DNA of 64,000 nucleotides from Phallusia mammillata (Eukaryota). The translations under genes were made by a program, and so were the position numbers. The DNA lies in the NCBI GenBank assembly GCA_965637545.1, contig OZ281497.1:28520001-28584000 (forward strand). The letters are read 5' to 3'. Shown one piece after another: positions 32,311 to 60,319 of the stretch (positions within the stretch are counted from its first letter, which is position 1; each line of letters begins with the position of its first letter). The notes under the pieces were generated by a model. It saw only the letters and a list, made by a program, of their open reading frames with translations, did not search any database and was not told where the DNA came from.

Positions 32311-33129
32311 AGATGGTAAAAGTCGTTTATTCACTCAACGCTAGAGAATCACGTTTTACTGATTCATCAAAGTATAATGGATGTTTAAGCATTATCACTG
32401 ATACTTGAAAGTGAGAAAAAGGCTGCTTGCAACAGTCGTAAAACCGTGTTGCTTTGGACGTTGAAACACGTTGGGCGTTAAACCAAAAATATTACAACAG
32501 ACTTCCACACAACAGTGCGTTATACAAATTCTTGTAAACCAAAGACCATCGGTTATTTGCTTAATTTAAATTCAGCTTAATATAATAGAATGCACATTCT
32601 AAGACGTGTGAATGAACATGAGTTAAAAAATAAATTACAAACATGACTATTAAGTTTAAGTCTTGCTTTGATGTGGTGCTGGTACGATTTAGGTCGCTAA
32701 AATGATTGGAGGGTAATTTTGCTATTATTGGGCTGCCTAATTCCCATGTGGCATTAGCACTATATGGTAGATGGTACGTCTACCTTACAAGTCCTTAAAA
32801 TTTGTCACTCACCAAAGAAGCAGCGTTGGTACATCTGTTTCAAAACTAACACAGTCTTTATTTGTTTTGTAAGTTTGAAACATTGACGGTATCGCATGAG
32901 TAAAATCGATAAATTTCTTTATGTTTGGAAGTGTAACGTAAAAAATGCAAAAAAACCTGAATACTGATTGTAACATAGTTTTGGTAAAGGTCACTCATTT
33001 TTAGTCCCCCAAGCATTACTTAAACTAGTTTATGGGCTTTTATTCTATTGAGAACTCTATTGAAAATCGTCATTGAGTAGGTTTTACAACATCATAAAGG
33101 GCAAAGGGGATCTTTTAAAAGCTTGATTA

Positions 33130-33353
33130 AAACAGTTGCGTAGCACAGGTATGCGGCTCAAACAATATCCGTTTTTGAATTTCTACAAATTTCGAGAAAA
33201 AAGGGCGTTGCTCAGCAACCAGTCATAACGAGAGAAACAGAATCGCGGTTCTCAGTTTGTTATAAATTTGGCTTTAAGTGCTTAAAATCCAATGAAAAAC
33301 CTTGAACTTGGTTGAGAGATGGAACCGCGAAGAAGAAAAGATGCAAAGTAAGT
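33130..33353 (+). promoter_or_regulatory. Putative promoter + short first non-coding exon, unit 2
   Basis: TATAAA 33261-33266, then AACTTGGTTGAGAGATGGAACCGCGAAGAAGAAAAGATGCAAA|GTAAGT (33348). Confidence 0.5.
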
Positions 33354-33950: not shown

Positions 33951-33970
33951 TATATATATATATATATATA
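33951..33970. repeat. (TA)n microsatellite
   Basis: Direct reading of a TA run. Confidence 0.9.
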
Positions 33971-36900
33971 CATCACAAAGTTCACTGACACTAGAATTTG
34001 TACAAACTGCTGAATCTGCAATCTGATTTTAGGCATGTATAATCAGCTTGCCTAATAGAACACATTTGGTAGTGAACCAGTCCCCCAAAAACCTATGCTG
34101 TCAATGGCAAATAATATGCAGTAAAGAAATTTCTACGAGACTCCTAATTGGTCCAAATCCTAGACCGGATAAGGTCAAAAATTTACCGCTTGGATCAGCA
34201 GCGCGCCACTTGAATTACGAAACCATTTGATTTTCTAACCACAAATGTTTGTTGACAGGACATTATACCTTCGCTTACCCAAATACGAAAAAAAATACAG
34301 ATCGGCCCTTCTGCTCTGCTATGGTCCAGTGTTGGTCAAGAAGAAGGGTGGTAAGCTTGGGTGATAATTAATTTTCTGGCTTAATATCCTACAAGATGAT
34401 TGCAATGTTAGTCTATTCCGTTTTATTTCTTTACCAAAATAGTCAACACCCGGTTTTATAGTTCCCTGAAATAAACGAGCTGTGTTTGTTTATAGGCAAT
34501 GCAATTAATTATATTCTGCTGCATATTTTTAGGTGATGCAAATTTAACTGCAATTTGATATTTACGATACAGTTTTGCAGAAAAAAACGTAATTTTGCTG
34601 AAGGCAGGTAAGTTTGCTGAGCACAGTGTAGTGATCTCGTGCAATTAATTAAGTATTTTGCTAATTTTAAACTCGTCCAACAACCATTGATGCGACGATA
34701 AGTTCTTATCTGCCTTTCACTTGTGCATCTAGTTGAGGTAAAACGGATCGGACAAGAACAAGTGTGGTACGTGTGTTATTTAATTTAGTCAAAAAAATTT
34801 TTTAATCTGTTTCGTTGCTTTTATGATGGTAAAAAGGGAACTGATCAAAACAAGTACTTAATTTTTATCTTTTTTAAGGCGTCCTATTTGGCGATCTCTT
34901 GAATAGAATTTAAAACAGTTCTTCGCTATGATGAGACACCTAGCGGCAAACAACTTTCAGATGTAATGTAGGTCGGACAAAAAGCCTACACATTGGACTA
35001 CAGACACACTGGGTTGAATGGAAGTTAACAGACTAAGGTAAGGACAACGTATCTATTGACAGTTAGCTTAAGCAGCGTAACTTTACACATGGTTTTACAG
35101 CTGCATGCGTTTGTAGAAAACAAGGTTATGATACAGACAAAATCGAAACACAAACTTTTATTAAACAAATGAAACCACACAACTTAAAAGCAAGCCTTAA
35201 AACTTAAGATATTAACCACACAAAAATCTATTGTTTAGAATTGAAAACAATAGGCAAGAAACAACTAGCATCAGAACTCTAAATGTTAACAATAAAATTA
35301 AGACAAACCAAAAAAAAAATTACGAACGAAGAAAAGAATTTCAATCTTAAACTTTGCAAAAAAATATAACAAGTAATAACGCACAAAATCGTTTCTTATC
35401 TGAAATTGTAGTACATTAAACCTTTAATGAACCATGCATACTGTCGATTATGCTGAAAACAAAGAACAAAAATAAAAATACAAAAATACAAAATAAAAAT
35501 AAACATTTCTATTTCCGCAACGTACCTCTTTGACGGAGTTGTGTAATCTTAGAACGCTAAAAACGTAAAGTGCGTTACTTTCACCAACAACGATTTGCTA
35601 GAAATATTTTTTACGCTTTGAATTCATAGTTTTTGATGGAATATCTTGGTATCCCACCGCGTATTTGCTGCACGCTTGAAACTGATTTTGCAACGATCTC
35701 GCCTAGGCAACCGTTTCACTTGTTACACGCATAACCTATCAGCTCATGGTTGTATTTCTGAAATGGATTTAAGCTATCACACGCATTGTTCGACACAAAC
35801 CTGTTTGCCCCGCGCTGCTTGGATGTGGGAACCAAAGGCTCAGGGGCCATTTTCTAACATTGAAAAACGTGCACTTTCATAGTAACTTTATGTGCATTTT
35901 GCTGTGTTTCTGCCTCATGATATTCAGTTAGCTTCTGTAATTGTTCAGCTCAACTAAGAAGCAAGATTTCAAACGCCATGTGATGATACAACACTTTTTT
36001 AACCTTTAACCTAGATGCGAAATTAACAACGGTCTCTAGCGAAATTGTTGCCAAGGTCGTTGGTACAAGATGTCACTAAACCAAACATGCGCTTTGTAAT
36101 CGTGAGAAAGGTAGCGATATTCCTGAGTAATCAAGATAATCTGGGTCGTGAGTGTTTTCGTAAACATTGTCCGCTGATAACAAATACAGTTAGCTAGATA
36201 GCTTGATAATTTAACATGCTACACACTGTTACACACTTGACGCGATGTTGAATGTCACCTTGCAACGTCTTTTTAGACAAAAATAATTTCGTGACGATTT
36301 GCATTTAACGCATTTATTTTACACTGACTGTTGTTGTTTGAAACTAGAGGTGAGGATCCTATTTGTTCCTACGGATCACATGATGATGGTGTTGCTTGCA
36401 TCTTTCCTTCTTTATTCCGTTTGTTTTACAATTAGAACATTATTCTGACGTAGAGACTATCAAATTGTAATGACGTAAACAAACACAAAATGTTAAAAAC
36501 ACAAATATGTTTTGTTCTATGATCCCCAAAATGTACGCAAGTGCTTTTAACTTCGAAATCCCTTCATTGATTACTGAACAGATCCTCTTATCTTATGCTG
36601 GTTGAGGCAATGTGCCATCTGCACAAAAACACTTTAACCTTTTATCGATCTACAAAACCATCCACCCACCACATTTCTTCAGTCAACTGCTGTGCTTTTT
36701 ACCTGCAAAGCTCATAATACCCAAATCATTGAAAAAAAGCAGACCAACGTGATTGAAAATTCCCCTTTACATAATCACCACGCTGGCACACATAAATTGG
36801 TATTTCAACCATGTTTTATTGGGCACTAGTACTATTAGTAAAGCTAAGCTACGTTAAGTTTATTTTTCTTGCAGACCCCAATGTCGGCACTCACTTGGTG

Positions 36901-39068
36901 CGTAATATAGTCTTGCTCTGGTCAGAAACCTGGCGGCAAACGACTTCGAAGTGAGACACTGACCCAGTTCGGAGCACTCGATTGCTGAAAACGAGAACAA
37001 AGTTTTTAAATAAAAGTAAGCGAACTTATGATTGTTACTTTAATATCTTTGTCTGTTTACACGCAATACACCGCAAATCATTATTTTTTGGATATAGCGT
37101 ACTGGTTTCCAATACCTGATATAAAACTAAATAAACTTATGTGAAGGAAAATCAGACATACCAATCCTGTTTCGTCCAACATGGGTTGAAACAAGGCAAA
37201 TCATGGCCGTGAGATTGCATAGTTTAGTCATTGGCGGATTAACTGACAATTTGGTTGCTGAGTTGTTGGTCCCCGATATCATAATGTAACTTGCAAATAG
37301 TCGAAAAGTGATTCTTACATGGTATGGCAGGCAATGAGCTACACATTTTAATGTTAATAGACTACCGCTTTTATAACACCGGACATGTCCGCAAACTTTC
37401 CTCGGCATTAAAAGTTAAGATCGCTTTGTGCCTCCCCTTGACATTGCTTACTGTTACTTACTGTTGAAGTTCAAAGATACACAGTGTGCAACGCTGTAGA
37501 GCGACGTCCTTATGATAATAGACGAACATTATGACCCAAGAACGTTGTTTGAAAACAATTAACAAAGTTAGTTTGCGGGATTCGTTACGTGACACGACAT
37601 TTGTGACTCGCTGCGCACAGACATTAACATCGCCTACTAGCTTGTTTAGCTGCGTTTTATTAGATTCAGCTTGACCGCGGGATCGCGCCGTTACGCTTAC
37701 ATTTCTGTCATTCGTTTTTCTGCATTTGTGAAATTATTTAGTTCATTTTCTAACATTTTTTATAACGACTAAAACGTTTTTCCGCATGAAGAAGATTAAA
37801 ATGTAATGTGTCAGTGTCGCGTTTATAATACGGTCTTGCACGCAAATATTAAAAACCTAACCCTTTGAGCTTTTCGACTGATACCCAGAAGCTGTCAGTC
37901 AGTTTCAAAGCAAATATTTTCTTTTAATAAAGCGTAGGTCCACACAGTACAGTTTCGAAAAAAGAATGACTGGCTCCGCAAAAACAAGTCAAAAACTGTA
38001 AGGCGCAGAACACAACGTGTGCTTCAGGAAAGACGCTGGGAGTCATAGACATGCTGCTATCAGCCACTTGCACTGTAACCCATGCACTATTAGTTTGCAC
38101 AATGGCACATATACAATGTAAATAAATTTGTGACAATCAGTCTTTTAGTAAATGTAGTTATACTAAGTGTTTTGTACAGACTACAATTTTCTTGTTGGTT
38201 GGACGATAACAAGAATTTTACAGCGTTGTTCTGTGACAATCAGCGGCGTACAAATATACAGGCCGAGTGTGCTCGAATGCAGAGAACAGCAACGAAATAT
38301 TTTGATAAAGGTAAGCGAAGTGATGTAGTCATTGCTTTGATGCAATTGTATGTTTCCTCGAAAGGCAACGACTTAATTGGGCAAACTTGTATTGTACACA
38401 AATCTGACAAACCAGTGTACTATTCAACAAAATAGGCGAGTCATTACTCAATGCAATTCTCAATGTATCTGTACATAAAAACCCAATCTGTTGGGTGGCC
38501 ACTAGTCAACACACATACCAGTGCAAATTCTCGTTGTTGCAACGTACCTATTTGACAAGGTTAAAACCTAATTTCTAAGAGTTTTTTTTGCGCAGCAAGC
38601 GCTTAGTTTGTCCGGTTTATAAAGTTTTACAATTGTGCCTGAAGTTAACCAGTGTTCAGTACAAACCTTATGAAACCTTATAATTTTCTGCACAAACTGC
38701 CGAATTGTTTGTGTGTTATTATCACTTCTTGCACGCTTGAAACTGTTTAAATACAGAAAACTGTTTAGCTTAACAATTCAAAATTTGAAAGTCACCTTGA
38801 AGTGTCGCTGCTTGAAGAGAAAATATTTTACAGCTTTCTCGTGTTTCGTGTCAAGCAAAAATACAATCGAGCAAAAAATCTTTACCTCAAAGTGTTCACT
38901 TAAAACGAATTTGTTGATTAGAAAAGGGATAACAAACTATATCTTCTCTTAAACTGCCAACCGCTTTTACCCCAAAGCGCCTAACGTTCTTTCCATAGTG
39001 ATAAGTTGTTTCAACGATATAACTGTTGGAAATTAGTAGGTAATTTGATAGACTTACCACAATAGTGG

Positions 39069-39369
39069 CAGTGGTTCCCTACCTTTTTGACCTTGCGGCA
39101 CTCTATTAAAGACATAAATAGTTTGTGACACCCTGGCAAAACTAAATCAATTTTTTGAGGTTTCTGTATTTCTAATAACTGTATGAAATAAGGAGCCGAG
39201 AATAACTGCGAGACGCGAAACTTAATACACACTGAAACTCGGTTAGAAATAAATAACTTCCGCACTTAACGGGTTAAAGTTATATTAAATAATGGGCCGC
39301 AGTATTGCAATATTAATATCTCGCGGCACCATTGACCATTTCAATTGGCACCCCGGTTGGGAACCACTG
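39069..39369 (+). mobile_element. hAT-type MITE
   Basis: TIRs CAGTGGTTCCCTACC / GGTTGGGAACCACTG; TSD not cleanly recovered. Confidence 0.65.
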
Positions 39370-40845
39370 TAGTGTCTCTACTGAGAGTAAAATAGCGGTT
39401 GCTAAATTGACATGACCTCATTCCCGCCTGAGTCGTTAGGCACAAACTCGTTTTCCTCTCACTACCATTGAGCGAAACCTCAGTATAACATGAAGCATCC
39501 AATATTGTAACACAGGTGTTTCGTGGTAACATTGTGTGTATTTCGTTGTGTTTTTGCCCCATGCTGTTAAATTTGTAGTTGTTAAGATCAACTACAAAGC
39601 AACATTGAAACGTCGCGCGATGTTTCAACACGTTTTAACCTTTAACCTGCATAAAAGAGTCAGTTGCGTCATTGCATTGCATTGGAGTTTGCAGCAATAT
39701 GTTTTTGCAATACGAAGGTAATCAAAAGGTCGCCTGAGAAATTGTTGCAATGGTCGTTGGTATGAGTTGTCGCGAAACTGTTTGGATTGTCATTGTGGAA
39801 AGGTAGCAATTTTGCTCATAGTCGACAACGTGTTTTAGCAAACATGGTCTGTAGATAACATATGCAGTTTTCTCATTAGCTTAAAAACTTCACACGCCAC
39901 ACCTCCCACGGTGCTAAGCACAGTGTTACACACAATTTGGCACGACAATGACGGTCACGTTGTATTTAAAGTATTTTACTGTCCAACGGGCCACATTATT
40001 CGCACAACATTACATACCGACCTAAAATGTGCTACATCATCACACGTTTAACTGTCAAACATAAATCTGTGATAATGATGAAGTCATTTTATAGAATATA
40101 TATAAATAAACTTTTGATGCTATGTGGTGGACAAAATCAGATTTGCAGATTCCTTATTTCAAACTCATGTTTCTTAACCAACTAAGGTCTATAACCGGTT
40201 AAAATTTGAAATATATAGTGCAAAACTATAGTGCAAACTACGTTGTTTAGTCCACTTGTGTGGGTTTTTTTGCTTGCAAAGCTTTCAAAACAAAATCATA
40301 CTTAGTAAGTGTATCGCAATTTTCTATTCACGGTATCTGTCACCAACCATTTTCTTTTCTTTTCACTGTTACGCTGGTAAAACAGGCTTTAGTGTGCTAC
40401 AGCAAACTTGATAAAGCGAGAAGACGTCACTTAATTTTTCTTTTTTGCAGACCCCAATTAAAGATCTTGAGAACTTCGAGAACTGTCAATACTTGTTCTG
40501 GTGGGCCACCTTGTGACAAACGACGTCGAGGTGAGACCCCAGCAGGTAACGTAGCAGTACATGCTGAGAACGAGAACGAAGCATTTTGTTACAGGTGGGC
40601 AAACTAAGACAGTGACTTTTAATTTGATAATTACGTGTAGATTTTTATAATTACGTGTAGGTTTGCGTGTCTTGTTTGCTGGGTGTTGAAACCTACTAAA
40701 GTCTCTATTCGGATTGTTGAATTTACAGCCCAGTATTATTTGGAATTACAATTGGACGTTTATTTTCATATGGGGGGAATTTTCTTGTGGTGAAATTTTA
40801 CGGACTTTAATTTATTGCGTTCACAATCGACTTCAGCTTCTAGCG

Positions 40846-41265
40846 CAGTGGTTCCCAAACTTTTTCATATTATTCTTCAAAACGGTCCCTTCGCCATTAT
40901 TTCGAGGGCTCGCGGTCCTTAAGCCTAAATGTGTATTTCACACAAACGAAAGTAGATTGCAGGATTTCAGCTAGTTATGCAAAATTGCGCATAACAATTA
41001 TCCAAAGACAGCAAGTGACATCACAAACAGGAAAAACATTACGACTCTGCCCGAACAATTGCATTTTTTGATAGAATTCATTAAATAAAGGCAATTGTTT
41101 AGCAATGGAGACAGTCGATTCTCAATTCTACTTTGATTTAAACTTATTTAGTGGCACAAACTGACGCCAAATAAGATTATAGAAATACTTCAACCGCTTC
41201 GCGGTCCCCCCAAAATTGCCTCACGGACCCCTAAAGGACCGCGGACCCCAGTTTGGGAGCCGCTG
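40846..41265 (+). mobile_element. hAT-type MITE
   Basis: TIRs CAGTGGTTCCCAAAC / GTTTGGGAGCCGCTG; perfect TSD TTCTAGCG. Confidence 0.88.
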
Positions 41266-44200
41266 TTCTAGCGCACCAAGATCTAAAAAGCTGTTAATCT
41301 TACACTTTAGAAAGAAATATCAGCTGACCAGCCTCCTCCATTTAATTGCATGGCGCAATAAGCTACAAATGATCTGTTACGCCATAAGGGCAATGTAGTA
41401 CAGTAATTCATTGTTGTGTCGTAGCCACAAAACCATTTGCGATACTTTATGCCAGTAAGTATAAAAGCAGTTCACGCATGAGGTTTAACGAGAAAGAGAG
41501 ATTTAACTACACGGCCGTGAAGGATGCGCAAGCCGTAAAACGATCAGGTCTGCTTTGCAGGCTGATTTTTTTCTCTTTAAAGTAGTAAAAAATGATCATA
41601 ATTTGCATATTTTTTCATTATGTAATTATTACAGAACGGTCGATCGCGTGCGATGCAATTTTTTTGTTAGTTTTAAACCGATCATATTGTTAGAATATGG
41701 ATCGTAAACGGAGTTTATTGTTTCAACTTGACAAGTTACTGAATAGATATTTGATATTTTTGTTACCAGTTTTATTATTTGTTGGGTAGGGACTCACTTA
41801 TGTGCTCCGGTCAGCACAGCATTGATCTAGACGGGCATATTATTGTTACAAAAATCAATACTAATCGAGACTTGGACCATTTGCTTATTTTAAGTCTCGA
41901 ATGTTCAAATACAAATCACAAACCGAATCACTCTGAAAACGTGTGATCTCGGCGTAATTCTAGCTGTGTGGTTGGACGTTTTAACTAAAGTGTTGTATTT
42001 GCAAAACGGAAATCATGCTGAATTGACGATAAATCGTTGTTTTGTGAAATCTTTCGGTTTTGTGAAATCAACGTTGACAAGGTTGGAACCAAAGCAAACT
42101 GTATTTTCCGATAAGCGTGACTGGCAGTGCCATTCAACGTAATCAGTGAGCAAACAGTTTGTTTCACACGATTTTGAACTTTGCACTCTTGATTTGTGCG
42201 GTTAACTGTTGTAAGACCAGAATCTATTGCGCCAATTCAAGCTTATTCAAAAACATAATCTCAAATGAAAGTATTAATTTGTCATTGTTTGGAATGTATC
42301 CATTTCCAATAACTTGTCTATCTTCACTTCATGACTGGCAGAGGTACTAGCCTTTGTGTGTGATTTTGAGTTTTTGCTCAGTCCTGAAATTCCTTGTTTA
42401 ATAAAATCGACACAAAAAAGCATGCTGCTTAAAAGGTTTTTATAGATCAAAGTAAGTAGTTTGTTAAAGTTAAATTTAAAAACGTTTGCGTAAAAATGTA
42501 GTTTTCCAATGACCTTTCTCACTGATTAGGGTCATGAACCAACTAAAGGCAACTTTGCTCCACATAACTAGCTCAAAGGCTCATAGTACAAGTTTTGCGA
42601 AGCTGTGGGGCAACGTCGTTATGATAAGAGACAAATATTGGTAGCCGATAACGCTTTTTGTCAATGCTGTGTAGAGGTAATTTGCGGGGTAAATTGCGTG
42701 ACAAGGCGTTATGTTGAGTTTCGATTGAATTACTAACTTTCACCGGTTCGTTGGCGATTCTTTTTTTTTCTATGTTTGCAAAAGTCTTTTGTGGTTTGCG
42801 GTCTATTATGATTTTGTGAAGCAGGGGACATGTTTTTTGTGCAGACTACAATTATCTTGGCTGCTGCCCGATGTCAAGAATTTTATGTACAGTCAAGGAT
42901 CGAGCTCTCGGGGGCAGGGAACAAGAACGATAAAGGTGAGCGAAGAGATTGCAATTTCTTAATTAAATTGACAAATAGGTCTGTTTTCGCGAATGGCCAC
43001 ATTTCTAGCTCGGCAACTTAGCTCTTTAACAGAGTTCGACTCATTGACGTACACAAATAGACCGTAACATTTATTATTTTTTTATTGCATATAATGCAAG
43101 CGTATCAACCCGTTGGTCTTAAAAAGTTGCCCGAATATAGAACGCACTATAATCTTGTAACCTGACCAAGTTTATCTCTTGGGAACAGTTCATTACAGTC
43201 AACTTTTGGACATATGAACGGTAACTGTAGCATACTGTTGTTATAAACGGGCGTGATAACGAGAAAAATTTGATTTGCAATACGCTGATTTGGTCATCGC
43301 ATCGGTTTCAAATTTTGCAGCAACTTGTTGTTGCGAGAGGAAGTTAACCCAAAGGTCGCAAGAGATATTATTGCAAAAGTCGTTGGTACGAGTTGTCGCT
43401 AAAAATATTTGTGTTAACAACCTGATATCCTATGTTAGGCAGGGTTACTTATTTTGACATCCTCTTTAGTGAGTATGTCAGTCCCAGGTATTTGTTCGGT
43501 TGTCCACCATGTCGGACTATAGTTAACTGACTTACACACTGTTGCTCTATTTTTCAAACAGAGTAAGTTGCAGTGGTGCATTCAGCAACAAACACTATTT
43601 TCTTTGGCTTGACGATCTCGAAATTTACCGGCAACTGTTTGCTCTGGTGTGACATCTGATGGTATGCAGCATCGAGATGAGACGAAGGCCGGAAGCAAAG
43701 CACTCGAATGCAGACGCACCGTGTTGGGTGAAGGACAAAGTGTTGAGGTAGAAGGCACGCAACTGGGTGACGCACAAAGGTAAAAAAGGGCGACACGAAG
43801 TTAAAATGTAAAAGCAACACGCACGCGGAGATGAAACAAAACGCACGCGGAAAGGTTACAAACGGGTGTACCCGAGGCAAAGCACGCTGCTAGATATCAC
43901 ACAAGTAGAGTGGCGTTGATTCCTGGTCTTTGTTTAATTCCGGGTTATGTTGTTGGTTACAATTCATGTCGGGGAAATTGGGTCATTGTGGCATATTCTG
44001 AAATGCTACCATAAGCACTTTGGTAGAAAATTTTGTTGGTTTGTATTTTTTGTTTTTGCATTATGATATGCTGTTAAATTTTGTGTTAAGATTAAAAATG
44101 CTTTAAAAGCATGATTTTTTTGAATCTGTACCAAGTTGTGAAACCCGCAGAGATAAACAGGGTTGCAGAGCAACCTGTGATGAGGCGAGTACTAAACTGA

Positions 44201-46307
44201 CGTTTGTAAACCCGAAGGTTCAGTGGCTGATCGTGAAATCAAAAATACCCATGATGCATGTGGCTAAAGATTCTCCTTGTTTGTGGTGATGTGGCACTAT
44301 TATCGAAACGAATTTTAGTTGTAATTTATTCAGTTTCAATCTAAACTCTCCGTTCCACGTCTCTTGTGGTCAGACAGTATGTCTCGATCGGTTGGTCGGC
44401 GGTCCACCATGTTACATTGTGGTGAACTTCTAATTACATATAGTATCGTGTATTGCAGACCTTCACAACTCCAAACCATGCAAGGGCCGAAACAAACTAT
44501 TTTTTGTTACAAGCTGCATGATAACGTTGTTACAACATTCGTACAATGTGACCGAAAGATATAGCTGATTACGACAAAACAAACAACCATTCAAAAATAA
44601 ATATCACTAACAATCTACATAAAGATAAACACAAATTTCTGCATAAAACACAAATTTCTAAAATCAAAAAAAATCGACAAGGTTTAACTCTAAGCACATA
44701 TATTTGCTGACAGGACATTACCTGCGCTGACCATGCACGACAGCAAGACTTGATCCGCCCATCTACCACTCCATGGTCCAGTTTCTCTTGGTCAAGAAGA
44801 AATGCGGTGAGCTTTTGTGTTGCTTATTTGCAGAGATTAGCTTTTTCCCTCACCACCATATCGCAGTCTTTTTTAACCTGCGCCAAAACGGTCAACAAAG
44901 AAATTTGCAAAGCTAATTCAATCCGTAGATTTCATATAAGTTAGAATATCCATTTATGACTTGATTTAGTAGGTCTTGTGATTAGGTTACACAACACAAA
45001 TTTATTGCCGAAAACGGATTTTGTAACGCACACCGCCCAGTCAAACATATCACTTGTTACCTGCACGTTCCATGGGCTAATGGTTGGTTTCCTCAAATTT
45101 TTTTTTCATCCTAAAGTAGTTAGAAAAATCCGTTTACAGTATTGGCAATATACGGCAATATAGGGTAAGCAAAGCTCCGGTTCGTTAGCAATTTTATTGC
45201 CGCCTCATATTAACGCCATTACAAAAACGTGATTAAATGTTCAGGGATTCGTTTAAGTTCTGTGATAGACATAACATTGGTGCGACCAGGACATTGAAGT
45301 GGTCCACTTGCAAAACGTTTATCATAATGAATTTGCAACTAATCCTGGTGCAATCTGAAATACATTCGGTTTAGTGAAATCAACGTCCACAAAGTAGGAG
45401 CCAAAGTCAATTTTGTGTTTCCGACCAGCGTGACTACCAGAGCCATCCAAGGTAGACAATAAGTTTGTTTCTCTCGATTTTAGACTTCGCTCTCTTAATT
45501 TATGAGTTTAATTCTTACAAAAACACCTGGTCGCCATTTAAGCCTCGTGAAATAGTTTCTTGTTGAGCAAACGTGCTGAAATATCAACTGTAATCACAAA
45601 AATGTACATTGCCATGTTTTATGAGCTGCTCACTAGGTTTTTTTAGATAAAAAGTCGTGAAGATATTTTTATAAAATATACCAGTTCGCAAACAAAGTAC
45701 AACTCCTATTTCTAACCACACATGCTGTGCATTGTTACTTTGCGTGGAAGTTACGCAAATATGGCATTATGCCTAGTTGTGTGCGGTTATTGACATTGCC
45801 CACGTCATCGTTTAACTGCCTACATTAGGATTTGATTTAAAGAGTTGCACTGGTTCACTGACGTTTTTTTCTATATTATTGAAATAAGTTCAATGACACA
45901 ATTTTCAGTCCTTTGTGGTTGCGTGATCTTTTATGATTTAGTGATGAGGACGTCAAAAATTATGTTTTATTTGTGTGCAGACTACAATTTTCTCGTCTGT
46001 TGCAAGATATCAAGAAATTAACAGCCTGTGCTCTGGTGCGACATCCAGCGGCGTACGAGAAAAAATACGAAAAAATACACAGAGGTCAAACTCTAGATTG
46101 TAGAGGACATGAACAATAAAGGCAAGTGATTTGACTATCTGTTTTAGCGAAATGTTACAATTTCCAGGACTTCGCTTTTTACAGAGTTCGACGCACACAC
46201 ATTCACATTTGTACGCTTCTTTATTCATTGTATAATTTGCAAGCGTCTAAACCCATCTCTTGACATTGTTGTACACCTCTTAAACCTTTAAATTTTGTAG
46301 GCCCTGA

Positions 46308-46433
46308 CAGTGTTTTTTTAAGGTGTTTTGGGGGACCGAAACGGTCCTACAGTTTTTGGTATTTAAATGAAACACTTGCGGTCTCTTAAAACTACTTGAC
46401 GGTCACTCAAACCAAACCTTAAAAAAAAACCTG
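46308..46433 (+). mobile_element. 126-bp MITE with 8-bp TSD
   Basis: TIRs CAGTGTTTTTTTAAGGT / ACCTTAAAAAAAAACCTG; perfect TSD GGCCCTGA. Confidence 0.8.
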
Positions 46434-48769
46434 GGCCCTGACATTATTTGGTAACTCCCTGCGTTTGTTGCACGCAGGTTCTGGTTCGCTGCGCCCGAGG
46501 AAAAGTCAATTACTACCTGCATTAAAGCGCAACAAGCCCCGACAAATGACGGCCACTTGTTAATTTCCCATTTTTTCTCCAGCTGTCCCTCAGTAAGTGC
46601 TAAGGCCAGTATAGGTCTCTGACGTTCACTCTGAGCGTCCATAAAACCCGCAGAGATAAAGGCGTTGCACAGCAACCTGGGATGACGCGAGAAATTAACT
46701 TGCGTTTGCAGTTATTTTGAAAGAGATTGCTTGATATTAGCTGTAGAACGCAATTTGTTTAAAGATCAATTAAGATTTGATTGCGTAGGTCCACATCTAA
46801 AATTTACTTCAAAAACTGCAAATGCGATGCAACCACAACTTCGATGCGTTTTAAATGTTCTCACCCTTGTTAAAATCGGCCCAAGATTGAGTGAATACTT
46901 ATGTTGAGCGAAACAGCGATGTCCAATTCATGCTAGTTATGTATGTGTATTTCCGTATCAGTGTATTTGGTCGAATAATTTGCTTTTTTTAAAGTATTTG
47001 TTGTGTCCTGGTGTTAAAACTTACGTTTACTGGTCGAAAGCGTGGAATACGAGTGACGTTATAACAAATTAGCCTGATTTGACCGAATTTATTGGTGAAA
47101 AACAAATTTAGTTAGTGCATTTTATGTACAGGTCGTTTAATTGATTTCGACCTTTTATAATTGTTGTCAGTTTACAACAATACTTGCGTGCAGATAACAA
47201 CATAGCGTGACACATAGTTAGTGACAGTTGACGCTTGTGGTGACCGCTATCTATTTTTTGTGAGTTAAATGTCATCACCAATCATGTCGAACTGATTAAC
47301 GTGAATAGTACGTGGCTGTTTTTGAATTTACTGATCCTGTTTGTGTGATTAAATTTTGGAACAATCCTATGTTGATTTGACAAATTGAAAAAATCACAGA
47401 AGCCTTATTTTCTATTTGCAGACCGTCATTGGCTTTCTCAAAGTTAAGCTCTGGTGGGACCTAGCAGTATGTCACTTCTTGATGTGACAAAGCCCGAAAA
47501 GGAAATGCTCCAATACCGACACATTGTGTTGGATCAGGGAAATTAAAGTGGGGTATTGAAAAATTTAATACAAAAAGTTGCATAATTGAAAAGTTACGAT
47601 CTATTTTGGTTAATAATTACAGCAATAATAAAAAGTTGCATCATGCAGTAGACTGTACATAAAAATGTAGTTGGGTTGATTGTTACCAGTATGAACCTTC
47701 AGTAAAATTAACGTAGTGTTTATATTAATGACGTTGTACAGTCTACATTACATCAAAAATTTTTAACTACGTACATTTGTTGACAGACTTTTACCTGTCG
47801 GAAGTGCAAGTTATGATCTGCCCAATAGTTTTACTAGATTGTTATGTGCATTACAGAATTTTAACATTTTGGGTACGAAAGTAAAAACTTCATTATTGGG
47901 ACATAATATGATTTCATGTTTACTGGATCGGGGTCAAACATTGTTTGATTTTGCAGAAAAGAATTACTCAGTTTTTATGCTGTAAACAAAGATAATTTAC
48001 GTTGCTGTACATGTCTGCTATGCGGATTGTTACAGCAACGTGTAAAAATCTAAAACTAAATTGCCATGGAACAGACAGTTTACAACGTTGCGTCCTCGCA
48101 TCAAAACTAGATCATTACGATGTATGTGAGTTAAACATGTAATAGAAAAACTGAATTCATAGTTTTGACATTTTTTTGTAGCAAGTTTAGATGCTGACTT
48201 AAAACAAGGATAACTATGGTCTTAGTTGATTTTCACACGTTTTAGGTTAATTTATTTCGTAACGTACAATGTATTTTAATGACTATTTTCAAAAACAATT
48301 ATTTAGTCTATCTGAACATGTTGCTTTTTTAGACTAAGGAAATTTTTTTACGATTTTATGATACTGTAGCAACTTTGAATCTCGTCACCATTCTAATACG
48401 AGGTTTACTGCGTGGTTGATAATTTGTTGTGTTTGGGTAGACTGAACATTATTAAATGATATATGCTTTCGAGATGTGTTTTGTTTAACGACGCGGATTG
48501 TACTACGCATCCACATTTTTTTGAGTGTTTTATCAAACATGTGTTTCACTTTGTCAGGTTTAGTTTGTTTTTGTTTTTGTTCGGCAATTATTTCTTTTTT
48601 AGATATAGGGCTATATTGTTGTAATCAAATTTTAATTATCTGGCCAATGTTGTATCTGTCAATTGTTTTTGAAGTCAACAAGCAAACGGACGAAAAAGAA
48701 ACCGTGTAAGTGTTACATATCAGTTAACATGAAGACAAAACTCCTGAAACAATTAACAAAAATCAAATA

Positions 48770-51166
48770 ATGGGCAATAACGCATCTAAAAAACATTCAT
48801 CCCGAAAAAGGGAGGAACAAGTAGCCAAGTCCAACAAGTCCCGAAGACCTGAAATCCAACCAAGCTTGTACCGAAGATTAAGCAACGCTGAATCCCAATC
48901 CAACTTGTTCCAAGGACCAAATAATGCTGAACAACCCGGCTTGTCACAAGGAAAAGGTGATGTTAAATCCCAACCTGGTTTGCCACAGGGACAAGGTGAT
49001 GCCAAACCCACATCCAGTTTGATACAAGGACCAGATTATGCTAAACCCCAACCCGGTTTGATCCACCAACCAAATGATGCTGGACCCCAATCAGGTTTGT
49101 TACAAGGACAAGGTGATGCCAAACCCACATCCAAGTTAATACAAGGACCAGATAATGCTGAACCCCAATCCGGCTTGACGCAAAGACCAAATGATGCTAA
49201 ACCCCAACCTGGCTTGCCACAAGGACAAGGTGATGTTAAACCCCAACCTGGCTTGCCACAGGGACAAGGTGATGCCAAACCCACATCCAGGTTGATACAA
49301 GCACCAGATAATGCTGATCCCCAACCCGGCTTGACCCAAGGACCAAATGATGCTAAACCCGAACCTACATTGGCCAAAGGATCACAAAGTACCATATTGC
49401 CTCCAAAGGCCACGAATTTAAATTGGCATGGTGACACACATATCTGGACACAAGGGCCAGTTATAGTGGATGTAACAACAAAGGAAACAAACGAAACACA
49501 TGAAGATGTTCAGTTTGTTGAAGATCTAATATCGTTGCTTAAAAAACATGTGGAAGCCATCGCTGGTGCAGAATCGTCTCTAGCAGATGTTGCCAAACGG
49601 AAAATAACACCAGTCAACCTTGCCATAGTCAGCAAACCACAACTAATTAACGACGAGTTTCAAGCAGAGGGGCATTATTGCCACAGAAAGGAACTTGTCA
49701 ACGTTTACAACATACCAACAGGTGACATAACCTATGAAGAAATGTTTGATGAGGCAAAAGATACAGCAGAAAAAGAAGCGGAAACAAAATTCTACCGGAA
49801 TGAAGAAAAGGCAAAACACGATTACGCGGAAAAACATGGAAACGTGGTCGGTGTGGTTGGACAAGCTGGAATAGGAAAGACGACCTCAGCAAAAACGTGG
49901 GCCAGGCAAGGTCTAAGGGGAGAGTTGTTCGGAGAGACTTCCTTCTTCTTTTACATTGTGATTAGGCACATCGACTTCACAAGAGAGATGACACTCCTTC
50001 AGTTTCTTCTCTTCACTATGGCGATAGAACAAGAATATACTTTAAAACAAGAAAAAGGCATTCTCAAAGCCGTTTGCAATGATCCAAACGTTGTGATGAT
50101 TTTTGACGGTTTTGACGAGGCACGTTTTAAATCTTTTTCCACAGAAGTTCCCCAGCCCCTACCACATTTCAAATCTAAAGCGGAAAACTACCTGAAGCAT
50201 TTAGTGGGAGGAAACTTGCTTCCACGTGCTCGGAAGATTTTTACGTCACGTCCTGCTCAACTATACAAACTCCATCCTTCATATAGACCAAGGTTTATTG
50301 TTCAAATACTTGGATTGACTCCAACATCACAAGATGAACTTGGACGTCAGATATGTGGAGACAAATACGAAGATGTACACCAACAACTTGAGCAAAACCG
50401 CAATGCATTTGCATACTGCTACGTTCCTGTCAATTTTATTTTGACACTTGTTTACTTGGTAAATTACAATGGAGATATTCAGTTTGTTTCACTCACTCGA
50501 GTCCTTGCTTTCACTTGTGGCCAATATCTCACAACCAATCATTTAAGGGGCCAAGAAGGTGAGTTGGACAAACTGGCGAAGTTGGCCTATGATGCATTTC
50601 TAAACATGGAGATCGTATTCAAAGCAATGGCATTCGTGAAAGCAGGCATCAAGGAATCTACAGCCGATGCATTTACAAACACGTCAGTCACAAAGCACGG
50701 GAATCTCAAGCTGACGATATTGGATGGTCACAAAGTTCGATATTTTTCTCATCTCATTTGGCAGGAGTTTTTTGTGGCTTTCTACCTGATGATGATCATC
50801 TCTCTAGACGAGTTTGAGGAAATCCTCAAACATTTTGTAGACGACAGATGGGAAGTAGTTTCTAAATTTGTTTTCGGGATTTGCGATCCTTCAGTTTTCC
50901 ATCAACTCGAGACTCTTGTTCCTGAGAGTTCTCCTAAGGATTGGAAGGAGAAGAAATCTTTGCTTATAAAGTTTATCCAGCATAAACCAAAGCTCAGTAA
51001 AGAAGAAATCTTACGAGATTGCAGCTGGGCTCATGAGTCAAATGACCTGGAAACTGCTTCATCTGTGGCCTCCCTACTTCCTGATGAGCTAGACCTTAGT
51101 AGATCATCTCTCCTTCCAGCTGACTTTGAGGGTCTTTCCTTCGTGATTCAACACAAAGAGACATCG
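48770..51166 (+). CDS. NLR-2 N-terminus + NACHT exon (799 aa)
   Basis: Uninterrupted ORF; GQAGIGKTT, VMIFDGFDE, FTSRP, FSHLIWQEFF; closely similar to NLR-1 across the NACHT. Confidence 0.95.
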
Positions 51167-54100
51167 GTAATGCTGTGATTTGTAATCAGCACTTTAGATT
51201 ACTGAGAAATATTTCCAAATATTTTTTTGGGATTCTATCTGCTCATTGTTAATTATTTGCCGCCAATTGATCAACATGTTTTGATAACGTCAATTTGTAC
51301 TAATATAATAAAAGGCACAACTGCGGAACTTCAACGTTCGCCTACAGCACCACAGCTATTCTATATCACTATAAACGTCACGAGGCCCAAAATCCCCAAT
51401 AAGGCAAGAAGTCAAAAAACTTCACATGACTTCAGTCCAATTATTTCCGACCATGTATACCCCCTATAATAATAGGAAACTATTTGATTAGCATGGGTAT
51501 ACAGAAAGTGACAATGTTGGTACACCATCATCACTAATGACGCAAGAGACCAAGAAGTTGTAGTCCAACTTGATCCAATGTGCTATAACGTCATGTGCAT
51601 CGGTAGCATGACGTACAATAACACAAAGTGACTCAAGTGTTGAGGGCGTACTTGTTTTACTGGAGTGTTGCTATAACAGGGCTCAACGCGTGTACAAGGT
51701 TCGACGTAAAGTTTATTTTTTACGCAAGTTCAAGCCGTTTTCACTTCATGACAAACAACACACTGCAAAAACTTGCAAAATAGTTTTTTAACCTAAAGCT
51801 AGCAAATATTCATTCTGACTAGAGTTGAAAACGAACTTGTCGAACCCGAAAGTAAGAAACCAAAACGCGCTTCTAACTCTTTTTTGTCACATAAAAATCT
51901 GTGTAAAGTCAGACCTGAATCTAGCCTGTTTTGAAGTCGGAACCCGAGCTCGGCCCACAACGCCCAACGCGACTTACATCGCTGCAGTGGCATGTTTTGC
52001 TTTAACAAGCGCTTTGGCCCTTATTCTTTGGTAATAAATAATGCAAGACATTAAAGCAAACTCATGTTGCCCAATAGCTTCCGGCAATTTGTTTGTACTA
52101 TGTAGCGTGTACTGCTGTTGTTTGATATTACCGAAATAGCTTTTGACGATTTGTCAAATTGTTTTTCATAATCGACCAATAGCAAGAGGCAGTATGCACA
52201 CAAAAAAACAGATATCAATTAATTCTTTCATTGCAATTAATCCTCACCTGTGTGACATAATAATAATAATAAAACAAACGATAAAATTATTTAGATTTTT
52301 TTCACCAATATGATACACTTTATTTTGCACTCATAACAGATAAATGATTCTAGGTAATTTTAGTAACATTTACAACAAGTCGTAATCCAAAGTTGTGCTG
52401 TCTATTTTTATTGACCTAAATTTTCCCGACGGTAAATGTGATGTTTTTTTATTGCAATAAAACTAGTTAAAGAAACTCGACCTCTCCGGCAACAAAATCG
52501 GTAACATGGAAGCAACTTCACTGGCTCCTTGTCTTTCTAACATGGAAGAGCTTGTTCTGAATGAGTGTTGTTTCGGAAATGAAGGCATCAAGAAACTCTT
52601 CGATGGAGAGAAAATCCTAACAAAGCCGGTAAAAACTTATACATTGACCACAATTTAACTTTCTCTCTTGCAAAGAGTAGATCCCTCATGAATGAATGTT
52701 ATTGTACGCTTTTTATGTTTTCTAAATAGCTTTTCTTGCTGCAATCAATGTGATCTTTTTCGTTTTATAAAAACCAGCTGAAGAGACTCGACCTCTCCGA
52801 TAATAAGATAGGCAACACAGGAGCAGCTGGCCCCTTGCCTTCCCAACTTCGAAGAACTTATTCTGTGGAAGTGTGAGATCGAAAGTGAAGGCGTCGAGAA
52901 ACTTTGTGATGGAGTGATGAAGCTATCAAAGCCGGTAAAAACTCATATTTTTGAGGATATTGAAATACATGTGAGCATGTCATTATTGTTGCTCGTCAAA
53001 TTAGGATCTTCTTCAGATGGCGGTAACAGGTCAAAAAATGTTTTCCAAATGTTTATGTCTATCTAACTTGCAAAATAATACTCGACATTTTGTGCACATT
53101 CATGACCAACGTATAATAACCAAACATGTATTTTTCATAACCAACCGCAGAACTAATCATGCTGCACATGTAAATTCGTGACATTTTTTTCTGTTTTAAT
53201 TTTTCATAACTTACGTTTAACTACATGAGAGATGTGAACAGTTTGTTTACCACAACGTGCTACTAAAAATCATTTATGCCGCTGGATATTAATATATTAA
53301 ATACAATTCATTTTTAAACGACCCTGCCCAGACTTAAAATTCGATTAACTTACAACATTAGACTTTTTTTGTTCGATATCATTACACTATGTTGCAAATA
53401 TGGTTGTATTTCGGGAATCGAACCACACCTTTTGTCGCAGAAAATGAACAAAGCAAAAAATGAGTGTGTATAATAAAATAAATATAACTTTCGTAGAAGG
53501 CGACGCTGTTGCTCAACACGTCCATTTGTTGTAACAAAAAATATTGTACAGCAGATTTTGCATCTAGCATGACTTCAACAACACTTACCGAAAAAAACGC
53601 ACACGTACTCCTTTCACTCCTGTATTGCAAAACAGTCTCGATGCACGTAGAGGCTTTGATGTAAAATAAATCATAAAGGCATTCCCAGGTCTGTCCAAGT
53701 AATCCAATAAACTAAAATTCTATAGGTAGCATAGAATAAAAAAATATAGGTAGCATTTGGGTTAATTTGATTCATTTATTTGAAAAAATACGTTAACAAA
53801 AAAGTTTGGAGCTTAGTTCACTTTTTTCCAAACTTTTGTTGCTACCTTAAACGTGAAACTTTTTTCGCATTAAAATCAGCTGAAGAGACTAGACCTCTCC
53901 TGGAGCAAGATAGGCAACACAGGAGCAGTTTCACTTACTCGTTGCCTTCCTTACATCGAAGAGCTTATACTGGAGAATTGTGCGAACGTAAGTGAGGTCG
54001 TCGACAAACTATGCGATGGAGTGAAGAAGCTAACAAAACCGGTAAAAACAAATTTATGTTTTTTTAAGGAAATGTTGCAATTATTTGAGCATGTTAGTAA

Positions 54101-60211: not shown

Positions 60212-60273
60212 TTTCACTTAGTTATTTCACAGATTACACCAGCGTTCACTTTGTTATTTCACAGATTACACCA
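60212..60273. repeat. Short direct tandem duplication
   Basis: TTCACTT(A/T)GTTATTTCACAGATTACACCA occurs twice. Confidence 0.85.
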
Positions 60274-60319
60274 AAGGAATTTATATGTAACCATTCGGCA
60301 ATAGTTTGTTCTTAGGTAT

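What the first reader, a model, noticed from the sequence alone, without database searches (positions are those of the whole stretch)
34879..47547. About 13-kb array of paralogous non-coding exons between promoter and NLR
Seen: at least 8 modules of 91-159 bp in unit 2, 3 in unit 1 and 1 so far in unit 3. They share a core (GACACCTGGCGGCAAACGACTTCGA-like), and most keep AG acceptors and GT/GC donors despite heavy divergence. Associated intronic motifs recur too: GGTCGTTGGTA..AAGGTAGC at 36055 and 39752, with its 5' part at 43380; CCAAAG..AGCGTGACT at 42089 and 45401; CCCGCAGAGATAAA..GTTGCA.AGCAACCTG at 44145 and 46647. Lengths are not 3n. Inference: either a combinatorial multi-exon 5' leader or alternative-promoter system for the NLR, or a spliced host transcript releasing repeated intronic small RNAs (the GAS5 or C19MC architecture). 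I could not identify convincing snoRNA or pre-miRNA structures by eye.
Basis: partly seen in the sequence, partly recalled or inferred. Interest (0 to 1): 0.7.

Follow-up and report, generated by a model that had tools for sequence, protein, structure and literature searches.

The report
Duplicated untranslated leader exons of NLR
The 13 kb in front of this sea-squirt immune-sensor (NLR) gene is filled with repeated copies of the gene's own start region, including short non-coding exon-like pieces that keep their splice signals, a layout shared by about 22 sister genes; no RNA data could be found to show that the pieces are used.

Summary
Window 34879-47547 holds eight diverged, same-strand copies of one module of 91-186 bp, here called T1. 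Each has a pyrimidine tract with AG in front and GT or GC behind. None keeps a conserved reading frame.

They lie between a conserved TATA promoter with a first exon (33040-33347) and the NACHT exon of NLR unit 2 (acceptor 48602/48603, ATG 48770). A second exon family, T2, has three copies interleaved with them.

The array grew by nested tandem duplication of the gene's own 5' segment.

T1 and T2 are not dispersed transposons. Of 53 placed strong T1 matches in the genome (Phallusia mammillata), 52 lie within 25 kb upstream of a NACHT exon on the same strand. They are spread over about 22 paralogues, with 1-8 copies per gene.

In the eight old copies the four splice positions are among the best-kept columns (P about 7e-4).

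I found no Rfam hit, stable hairpin or consensus RNA fold, so the small-RNA host idea is not supported.

No transcript evidence could be obtained. The best reading is therefore alternatively included, uATG-rich untranslated leader exons, as in human NOD2. This remains an inference.

The parts
33040..33291 (+). Promoter element P of NLR unit 2, with TATAAAT at 33261-33267. There is one full copy per gene.
   Evidence: It aligns at 71-77% with one element upstream of seven paralogues and unit 3. The TATA box and upstream motifs are conserved.
33292..33347 (+). Putative non-coding exon 1 (E1). Its 5' end is inferred as about 30 nt after the TATA box. Its 3' end is ..GATGCAAA|GTAAGT.
   Evidence: The donor is conserved in all nine aligned copies. 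The transcription start was not measured.
34259..34350 (+). T2_1, a copy of the second leader exon family: ttgttgacag|GACATT..GGGTG|gtaagc.
   Evidence: (D3).
34691..34769 (+). T2', a truncated T2 copy that keeps the 3' half and a GT donor.
   Evidence: nhmmer E 3.8e-5. The same truncated copy sits before T1 in the paralogue units.
34879..35037 (+). T1 module A (159 nt).
36875..37015 (+). T1 module B (141 nt). It carries the best core match, at 36925-36949.
38180..38310 (+). T1 module C (131 nt).
   Evidence: (D2).
40451..40594 (+). T1 module D (144 nt).
42845..42935 (+). T1 module E (91 nt). The core is deleted.
43562..43747 (+). T1 module F. It is 80-87% identical to the young family consensus from 43607 on. 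The ancestral acceptor is deleted, and AGs at 43561, 43572 and 43585 are only candidate replacements. A different repeat starts right after the donor.
44117..44202 (+). Decayed internal copy of promoter P with no TATA box.
   Evidence: nhmmer with the P profile, E 0.002. It pairs with 46644-46708 at 83%.
44714..44806 (+). T2_2 (93 nt), 77-85% identical to the T2 copies of the paralogues.
45981..46121 (+). T1 module G (141 nt), with a GC donor.
46650..46739 (+). Second decayed copy of promoter P with no TATA box.
   Evidence: nhmmer E 4.9e-8. BLAST aligns 33195-33266 with 46652-46722 at 71%.
47422..47547 (+). T1 module H (126 nt).
47787..47872 (+). T2_3, a weak and tentative copy in the position of the last T2 exon of the paralogues. 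The acceptor ttgttgacag| is kept and the 3' half has diverged.
   Evidence: nhmmer E 9e-6; sequence read.
48603..48769 (+). Untranslated start of the NACHT exon, after the conserved acceptor ttttttag|. It contains an in-frame stop at 48725-48727 and a short upstream ORF.
   Evidence: The acceptor and the following sequence align in five paralogues; sequence read.
48770..51178 (+). NACHT exon open frame of NLR unit 2. It starts MGNNASKK (a myristoylation-type MGxxxS start), followed by 13-residue tandem repeats and then the NACHT domain.
36019..36224 (+). Intron relic 'patch 1' (GGTCGTTGGTA..AAGGTAGC). Further copies lie at 39713-39902 and 43293-43403.
   Evidence: It is low copy and also lies upstream of two other NLR paralogues. 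It has no stable fold.
41988..42219 (+). Intron relic 'patch 2' (CCAAAG..AGCGTGACT). A further copy lies at 45297-45525.
   Evidence: (D4). Part of it recurs about 5 kb upstream of three NACHT exons of a more distant subfamily. It has no stable fold.
2224..2543 (+). Promoter P of unit 1. Degenerate T1 copies follow at 5764-5950, 6481-6540 and 7026-7131.
60221..60675 (+). Promoter P of unit 3. Its first T1 trace is at 63909-63941 and the array continues beyond the window.

Best explanation
The stretch is the long leader region of NLR unit 2. It runs from the gene's TATA promoter and first exon (33040-33347) to the exon that carries the start codon and the NACHT domain (acceptor 48602/48603, ATG 48770).

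Nested tandem duplication of the gene's own 5' segment filled this region. That segment holds the promoter, the first exon and two kinds of short non-coding exon: T2 of about 93-97 nt and T1 of about 154 nt.

The T1 and T2 copies do not code for protein, but they keep a pyrimidine tract with AG and a GT or GC donor. They most likely act as untranslated leader exons that are spliced, in variable number, between exon 1 and the NACHT exon. Because they carry upstream ATGs, including more of them should lower translation of the NLR and could expose the mRNA to nonsense-mediated decay.

What is shown and what is inferred:
- Shown: the anatomy, the origin by duplication, the non-coding nature, the restriction to the leaders of about 22 NLR paralogues, and splice positions kept better than neighbouring bases.
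- Inferred: that the modules are spliced into mRNA, and that their number tunes expression.
For: - **Promoter and first exon.** One conserved TATAAAT element, followed by a short exon ending ..GATGCRAA|GTAAGT, is present once per gene in nine aligned copies.
- **The NACHT exon is an internal exon.** Its acceptor (ttttgcag|ATGTAGG, or ttttttag|ATATAGG in unit 2) and the following 167 nt are conserved. The start MG-N-x-x-S-K-K is conserved too. A stop sits in frame at 48725-48727, so upstream exons cannot extend the protein.
- **Module homology.** The eight modules are homologous.
- **Non-coding.** Lengths differ by non-multiples of 3, most copies have stops in every frame, and the one open consensus frame has no Pfam or Atlas relative.
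- **Splice signals are kept.** In an alignment of the eight old copies the acceptor A and G, the donor G and the donor T are identical in 7, 7, 8 and 7 of 8 copies. Only 33 of 194 columns reach that level, giving P = 7e-4 for four columns. Exon bodies average 0.69 identity to the majority base against 0.50 in distal flanks.
- **Not a dispersed repeat.** Of 53 placed profile hits with E <= 1.4e-9, 52 lie within 25 kb upstream of a NACHT exon of the >=73%-identity subfamily, on the same strand. They fall in 22 genes with 1-8 copies each. The 24-nt core and T2 have the same distribution.
- **Canonical layout.** In ten paralogues the order is P, then repeats of [T2, optional truncated T2, T1], then a last T2, then the NACHT exon.
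- **Duplication history.** Colinear relics, including promoter copies, lie inside the array.
- **Precedent.** Human NOD2 has alternatively spliced 5' untranslated exons whose upstream ORFs repress translation (PMC2228316).
- **The gene family is expressed.** A cDNA-derived Phallusia mammillata protein is 100% identical over 607 residues to a paralogue 125 kb away.
Against: - **No transcript evidence.** The only runs that hold the locus are DNA. The two probable RNA contig sets cover only repeats within 42840-48839. A protein word search with the N-terminus found no transcript-derived fragment.
- **Possible unspliced contig.** One probable RNA contig carries the end of a paralogous T2 exon together with its intron, which means it is unspliced there (record 26).
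- **No exon-specific constraint in the young units.** In the recently duplicated units of the paralogues, introns are as well kept as exons (0.78-0.87 against 0.68-0.91). Evidence for constraint on the exons therefore rests on the eight old copies of this one gene, and these are not independent of each other.
- **Decay in unit 2.** The family's 24-nt core has decayed in all unit 2 copies. F has lost its acceptor and E has lost the core.
- **Copy number varies freely.** Counts of 1 to 8 per gene suggest little constraint on number.
- **Cost of full inclusion.** A full-inclusion leader would be about 1.5 kb with 27 upstream ATGs, which would make a poor mRNA.
- **Trans-splicing alternative.** Ascidians use spliced-leader trans-splicing (background knowledge). 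Used at the NACHT-exon acceptor, it would discard everything upstream.
Confidence: 0.6

Rival explanations
1. Neutral relics. The modules are left-over pseudo-exons from unequal crossing-over in the leader, and mature mRNAs do not include them. Either exon 1 or the last T2 is joined directly to the NACHT exon, or a spliced leader is trans-spliced onto the NACHT-exon acceptor and the whole upstream region is thrown away.
For: - Copy number varies from 1 to 8 per gene.
- In the young units, introns are as conserved as exons.
- The core has decayed in unit 2, F lacks its acceptor and E lacks the core.
- Intron patches survive as well as exons in the old duplicates.
- No spliced RNA was seen, and one contig is unspliced at a T2 donor.
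Against: - All four splice positions rank among the best-kept 17% of columns in eight copies whose flanks are at background identity.
- The pyrimidine tracts and GTRAG donors are strong in 10 of 11 modules.
- The arrangement of T2 subtypes is shared between paralogues, so the array has persisted through the gene duplications.
Confidence: 0.28
2. DNA-level control elements. The conserved T1 core GCTCTGGTGTGACACCTGGCGGCA contains a near-palindrome GGTGTGACACC and a CACCTG box. On this reading it is a repeated transcription-factor site, so the array works as an intronic enhancer cluster shared by the NLR subfamily and not as RNA.
For: - The core is the best-kept part of T1 across young and old copies.
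- It occurs 35 times with at most 2 mismatches, and all but one of these lie in NLR leaders.
- There is no RNA structure.
- The resemblance to T-box half-sites and E-boxes is from memory only.
Against: - In unit 2, the finding itself, the core has decayed while the splice signals are kept.
- Strict same-strand orientation relative to the gene is expected for exons, not for enhancers.
- No binding data exist.
Confidence: 0.07
3. Host gene for intronic small RNAs (GAS5 or C19MC type). The spliced exons are by-products, and the recurring intronic motifs are the products.
For: Only the repetition of intronic motifs next to repeated exons.
Against: - There is no Rfam match at E <= 1 over 33000-49000, apart from one chance bacterial hit outside the array.
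- The six motif copies fold no better than shuffles, with z from +0.60 to -1.12.
- One motif is a promoter relic.
- The motifs are low copy, at 67-83% identity and without compensatory pattern.
Confidence: 0.02
4. A transposon or SINE family that happens to carry splice-like ends.
For: There are more than 100 copies in the genome. Other true repeats do sit in the array, at 46308-46433, 43750-43955 and 40839-41265.
Against: - 52 of 53 placed strong hits are upstream of a NACHT exon of one subfamily and co-oriented with it.
- There are almost no hits elsewhere.
- The copies are embedded in colinear segmental duplications together with promoter copies.
Confidence: 0.02
5. Coding N-terminal repeat exons, as in fish NLR-C genes.
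For: One frame of the young T1 consensus is open over 51 codons, and 6 of 16 young copies have no stop in it.
Against: - Lengths of 135-166 nt differ by non-multiples of 3.
- Reading T2 into T1 meets a stop in every frame that I read by eye on the consensus sequences.
- There is no Pfam or Atlas relative.
- A stop lies in frame between the NACHT-exon acceptor and the conserved MGN start.
Confidence: 0.01

Closest known systems
Human NOD2 (CARD15) 5' untranslated exons 1a/1b (Rosenstiel et al. 2007, PMC2228316)
   Same: This is an NLR gene with extra non-coding exons between an upstream promoter and the exon that holds the start codon. The exons carry upstream ATGs. In NOD2 their inclusion is regulated and represses translation.
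   Different: NOD2 has two such exons, shown by RT-PCR and reporter assays. Here there are 11 exon-like modules of two families, made by tandem duplication. They are shared by about 22 paralogues, and there is no RNA or functional evidence.
NMD and upstream-ORF control of plant NLR transcripts (for example PMC7663611, abstract seen)
   Same: The idea is the same: NLR dosage is held down after transcription through features of the mRNA.
   Different: The plant mechanism involves different gene structures. Nothing here shows NMD sensitivity.
Zebrafish NLR-C N-terminal repeat exons (from memory: Howe et al. 2016, Open Biology; not read here)
   Same: Both have a variable number of short, tandemly duplicated exons upstream of the large NACHT exon in a massively expanded, clustered NLR family.
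   Different: In fish the exons encode a peptide repeat of about 30 residues. Here the exons are non-coding, and the peptide repeats (13 residues) lie inside the NACHT exon.
Clustered variable first exons (protocadherin, UGT1A)
   Same: An array of paralogous exons lies upstream of constant exons, and promoter sequences were duplicated along with the exons.
   Different: In those systems each exon has its own live promoter and only a donor site, and it is coding. Here the modules have acceptors, and the internal promoter copies are decayed.
GAS5 and C19MC small-RNA host genes
   Same: Both have repeated short non-coding exons with recurring intronic motifs.
   Different: No snoRNA or miRNA model matches, no stable hairpins are present, and the motifs are duplication relics.

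Membership tests
Untranslated 5' leader exons of a protein-coding gene (NOD2-type) | They lie between the promoter or first exon and the start-codon exon, on the gene's strand. | tested here: met
   P/E1 is at 33040-33347, the modules span 34259-47872, and the NACHT exon starts at 48603. All are on the + strand.
Untranslated 5' leader exons of a protein-coding gene (NOD2-type) | They are bounded by functional-looking splice signals that are maintained in evolution. | tested here: met
   Ten of 11 modules have a pyrimidine tract with AG and a GT or GC donor. The splice columns rank in the top 17% of columns, P = 7e-4.
Untranslated 5' leader exons of a protein-coding gene (NOD2-type) | They have no conserved reading frame and cannot extend the protein. 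| tested here: met
   A stop at 48725-48727 lies in frame upstream of the conserved MGN start.
Untranslated 5' leader exons of a protein-coding gene (NOD2-type) | They are present in the mature mRNA, joined to the coding exon. | not testable with these tools
   The runs that hold the locus are DNA. The probable RNA contigs cover only repeats. No transcript-derived protein fragment was found.
Small-RNA host gene (GAS5/C19MC type) | The introns encode snoRNAs or pre-miRNA hairpins. | tested here: not met
   There are no Rfam matches. Folding z-scores run from +0.60 to -1.12. One motif is a promoter relic.
Dispersed transposon or SINE | Copies are scattered over the genome in both orientations, independent of any gene family. 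| tested here: not met
   52 of 53 placed strong hits are co-oriented with, and within 25 kb upstream of, a NACHT exon of one subfamily. Searches agree.
Variable first-exon cluster (protocadherin/UGT1A type) | Each variable exon has its own promoter and lacks an acceptor. | tested here: not met
   The modules have acceptors. Only two internal promoter copies exist, and both lack the TATA box.
Coding N-terminal repeat exons (fish NLR-C type) | The exons are in phase, with lengths of 3n and a conserved open frame. | tested here: not met
   Lengths and stops are given. The consensus frame has no family match.
Structured RNA element | There is a consensus secondary structure supported by covariation. 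| tested here: not met
   RNAalifold on 27 T1 copies gives -0.35 kcal/mol, with 4 pairs and essentially no compensatory change.

The most novel reading that the evidence does not exclude
The T1/T2 leader array could be a family-wide dosage control for an expanded ascidian NLR subfamily. The number of upstream-ATG-bearing leader exons included by splicing would set translation and NMD sensitivity. The shared 24-nt T1 core would give one trans-acting factor, either an RNA-binding protein or a small RNA, a handle on all of the roughly 22 genes at once. This would be analogous to miR482/2118 control of plant NLRs.
Probability: 0.12. Interest if true: 0.7.

Novelty: new variant of a known kind. Interest (0 to 1): 0.4.

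Why it matters
Large NLR families must be kept quiet to avoid self-damage. How invertebrate chordates manage this is unknown. A shared, duplicated, uATG-rich leader in front of about 22 clustered NLR genes would be a concrete handle on post-transcriptional control of an expanded animal NLR repertoire, and it could be tested with 5' RACE, long-read cDNA and reporter assays.

If the exons turn out to be unused, the locus is still a clear example of how unequal crossing-over copies promoters and leader exons inside a fast-evolving immune gene cluster. In that case it is ordinary genome turnover.

Tried and rejected
- **RNA evidence.** The single run search found only two DNA holders and 12 same-species runs with next to none of the words. 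Laying 42840-48839 on two DNA and two probable RNA contig sets gave no coverage of unique sequence in the RNA sets and no splice joints. The joints listed there occur in the DNA runs and have non-GT..AG ends.
- **Protein word search.** A search with the first 120 residues, meant to fish transcript fragments with their 5' UTR, found nothing.
- **Upstream coding exon of a paralogue.** I looked for the upstream coding exon of the cDNA-supported paralogue (residues 1-89 of P0001) and found nothing.
- **More paralogue loci.** The comparison therefore rests on ten paralogues plus the window.
- **Other searches.** The Rfam scan, folding of the motifs and modules, and RNAalifold were all negative. Pfam on all ORFs of at least 70 aa in the region, on both strands, and on the open T1 frame gave nothing. 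The Atlas look-alikes were at chance level.
- **Bacterial promoter scan.** I ran it on the P element, but it does not apply to a eukaryote and I ignored it.
- **Rejected readings.** I rejected coding repeat exons, a transposon family, a small-RNA host gene and a live alternative-promoter array.
- **Joined exons.** I joined the predicted leader exons only inside a script, to count length and ATGs. No joined sequence was printed, saved or sent to any search tool.

Full report
**What the window is.** The window is G000:C4:28520001-28584000 of a 240-Mb sea-squirt genome. A cDNA-derived Phallusia mammillata protein (P0001, 'COS1.5') is 100% identical over 607 residues to a paralogue 125 kb downstream of the window.

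The window holds tandem NLR genes:
- Unit 1 has its NACHT open frame at 16257-18191.
- Unit 2 has its NACHT open frame at 48770-51178, LRR exons at 52364-54231 and its C-terminal part at 55549-57389.
- Unit 3 starts from about 60200.

Pfam finds NACHT in both large open frames.

**Check of the observation.** Reading 34000-48900 and aligning the candidates confirms eight homologous, same-strand modules. A profile built from them finds exactly these eight, three copies in unit 1 and one in unit 3, all on the + strand. After correcting the borders by 1-13 nt the modules are:
- A 34879-35037
- B 36875-37015
- C 38180-38310
- D 40451-40594
- E 42845-42935
- F 43562/43600-43747
- G 45981-46121
- H 47422-47547

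Their lengths run from 91 to 186 nt. Each is preceded by a pyrimidine tract and CAG or AAG. Each is followed by GTAAG, GTGAG, GTGGG, GTAGA or, in G, GCAAG.

**What surrounds the modules.** Upstream, 33040-33347 is a single-copy element that aligns at 71-77% with one element in front of each of seven paralogues and unit 3. It contains a conserved TATAAAT (33261) and, about 85 nt later, a conserved donor ..GATGCAAA|GTAAGT. I read this as a promoter plus a short non-coding exon 1.

Downstream, the NACHT exon does not begin at its ATG. Similarity to five paralogues begins at a conserved acceptor, ttttttag|ATATAGG at 48602/48603 (ttttgcag|ATGTAGG in the paralogues), 167 nt before the ATG. The start MG-N-x-x-S-K-K is a myristoylation-type MGxxxS motif by general knowledge, and it is conserved. 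A stop at 48725-48727 lies in frame between the acceptor and the ATG. The large exon is therefore an internal exon whose protein starts inside it, and whatever is spliced in front of it is untranslated.

**A second exon family and the canonical layout.** Comparison with ten paralogous upstream regions (L001-L020) shows a second module, T2. It is about 93-97 nt, ttgttgacag|GACATTACC...AGAGTG|gtgagc. In the window it is present at 34259-34350 and 44714-44806, truncated at 34691-34769 and weak at 47787-47872.

In the paralogues the order is: P/E1, then repeats of [T2, sometimes a truncated T2, T1], then a distinct 'last' T2, then the NACHT exon. T2 subtypes sit in the same relative positions in different genes. 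The array therefore predates much of the expansion of this subfamily.

**Not a transposon.** BLAST with single modules finds almost nothing elsewhere. The profile finds at least 129 matches. Of the 53 placed matches with E <= 1.4e-9, 52 have a NACHT exon of the >=73%-identity subfamily on the same strand, 2-24 kb downstream. They fall in 22 genes with 1-8 copies each, and unit 2 of this window has the most.

The 24-nt core occurs 35 times with at most 2 mismatches, and all but one are in these leaders. T2 has the same distribution. The more distant NLR subfamily at 26.0-27.3 Mb has no T1 matches among the hits compared.

**Not coding and not structured.**
- T1 lengths in the family (135-166 nt) differ by non-multiples of 3, and most copies have stops in all frames.
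- One frame of the young consensus is open, which has a chance of roughly 1 in 4 for 51 codons over three frames. It has no Pfam match and only chance-level Atlas look-alikes.
- No ORF of at least 70 aa on either strand of 33000-48700 has a credible Pfam match.
- RNAalifold on 27 T1 copies finds no consensus structure (-0.35 kcal/mol).
- Single-sequence folds of the modules are inconsistent, with z from -0.6 to -2.4.

**How the array arose.** A sensitive self-comparison of 33000-48800 shows colinear blocks:
- 35853-37073 matches 39498-40619.
- 37471-38220 matches 42581-42885.
- 41988-42219 matches 45297-45525.
- 42783-43173 matches 45907-46315.
- 36019-36080, 39668-39777 and 43293-43403 match one another.

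These are nested tandem duplications of segments holding one or two T1 exons plus intron.

Both copies lack the TATA box. The duplicated unit therefore included the promoter, and the internal copies have died.

The other two motifs are low copy, do not fold better than shuffles and also occur upstream of other NLR paralogues. Part of 'patch 2' lies about 5 kb upstream of three NACHT exons of the distant subfamily. I could not explain this, because no more genome sequence could be fetched.

In the paralogues the units are young or homogenised. Introns (0.78-0.87 mean pairwise identity) are kept as well as exons (0.68-0.91), so nothing can be learnt from them.

Unit 2 is the informative case, because its modules are old. 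In a global alignment of the eight modules with 40-nt flanks, distal flanks are at background (0.50 identity to the majority base) and exon bodies are at 0.69. The acceptor A and G, the donor G and the donor T are identical in 7, 7, 8 and 7 of 8 copies. Only 33 of 194 columns reach 7 of 8, so four given columns all doing so has P = 7e-4.

There are caveats. The copies share ancestry. F lost the ancestral acceptor by deletion. The family core has itself decayed in unit 2.

**RNA evidence.** None could be obtained.
- The run search found two holders that behave as DNA, with even and contiguous coverage, plus 12 same-species runs with next to none of the words.
- I laid 42840-48839 (E, F, T2_2, G, H and the NACHT-exon start) on two DNA and two probable RNA contig sets. 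The RNA sets touch only repeats (43750-43955, 46308-46433) and 40 nt of a paralogous T2 exon end with its intron, which is unspliced there.
- No GT..AG joints appear.
- A protein word search with the N-terminal 120 residues found no transcript-derived fragments.

This is absence of data, not evidence of silence.

**Interpretation.** The anatomy is that of a gene whose transcription starts at P and whose first coding exon lies 15.4 kb downstream. In between are 11 exon-like non-coding modules with good splice signals. The most economical reading is a multi-exon untranslated leader with variable inclusion.

The modules and the two fixed UTR parts contain 27 ATGs in 1527 nt if all are included (the exons were joined only in a script for counting, and nothing joined was searched). 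Inclusion should therefore depress translation of the NLR. This is the mechanism demonstrated for exon 1b of human NOD2 (PMC2228316).

The main rival is that the modules are skipped relics. Exon 1 or the last T2 might be joined directly to the NACHT exon, or spliced-leader trans-splicing at 48603 might remove the whole upstream region. Trans-splicing is common in ascidians by general knowledge and was not tested here.

A minor rival is that the conserved core works as a DNA site. Its strand-specific orientation, and its decay in unit 2 while the splice signals persist, argue against this.

**Verdict.**
- Observation: confirmed.
- Interpretation: partly supported. The leader-exon reading is supported by structure and comparative evidence. 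The alternative-promoter reading is weak. The small-RNA host reading is not supported.
- Novelty: modest. This is a family-wide, duplicated version of a known kind of feature, untranslated NLR leader exons. I found no paper describing it in ascidians.
- Limit: without RNA data its use and function stay inferred.

Noticed in passing
window 48603-48608 and the paralogues aligned: In five paralogues the NACHT exon begins with ATGTAG, a start-stop mini upstream ORF directly at the acceptor. Unit 2 has ATATAG instead. Unit 2 also has a 13-codon upstream ORF (ATG at 48729) that ends next to the main ATG.
   Followed up: partly
window 48770-48793: The NLR proteins of this subfamily start MG-N-x-x-S-K-K, an N-myristoylation-type motif conserved in six genes. 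This hints at membrane anchoring of an NLR that has no death-fold domain.
   Followed up: no
window 46308-46433: This is a very high-copy short repeat. Summed contig depth is about 3000 times the single-copy level in the DNA runs. It is also present in the probable RNA contig sets and in inverted orientation near two paralogues.
   Followed up: no
window 43750-43955: A different repeat begins 3 nt after the donor of module F and replaces the intron flank found in the paralogues. It is covered by probable RNA contigs with 4-6 mismatches.
   Followed up: no
window 40839-41231 (also about 39040-39370): These are MITE-like elements with terminal inverted repeats (GGTTCCCAA...TTGGGAACC). The first is 88% identical to an inverted copy in the leader of the paralogue at C4:30.44 Mb.
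   Followed up: no
It may be a leader or promoter element of that subfamily.
   Followed up: partly
G000:C4:28709697-28711517: The cDNA-derived P. mammillata protein COS1.5 (P0001) matches this paralogue at 100% only from residue 90. The genomic open frame extends just 12 codons further upstream, so its first 89 residues must come from an upstream exon or a different haplotype. They were not found.
   Followed up: partly
G000:C4:28326846-28326944 (-): A weak T1 match (E 2e-4) lies in inverted orientation 1.9 kb from a + strand T1 copy, upstream of the NACHT exon at 28335127. It is the only inverted pair seen and could form a hairpin transcript.
   Followed up: no
window 10001-14000: A GC-rich segment (46% against about 36%) lies inside the leader of unit 1, with ORFs of 121-176 aa on both strands that have no credible Pfam match. 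It may be an inserted element.
   Followed up: partly
window 44788-44827 (record 26): A 350-nt contig of a probable RNA run carries the end of a paralogous T2 exon followed by about 300 nt of its intron. At least one T2-type region is therefore present as unspliced RNA, or as DNA carry-over.
   Followed up: no
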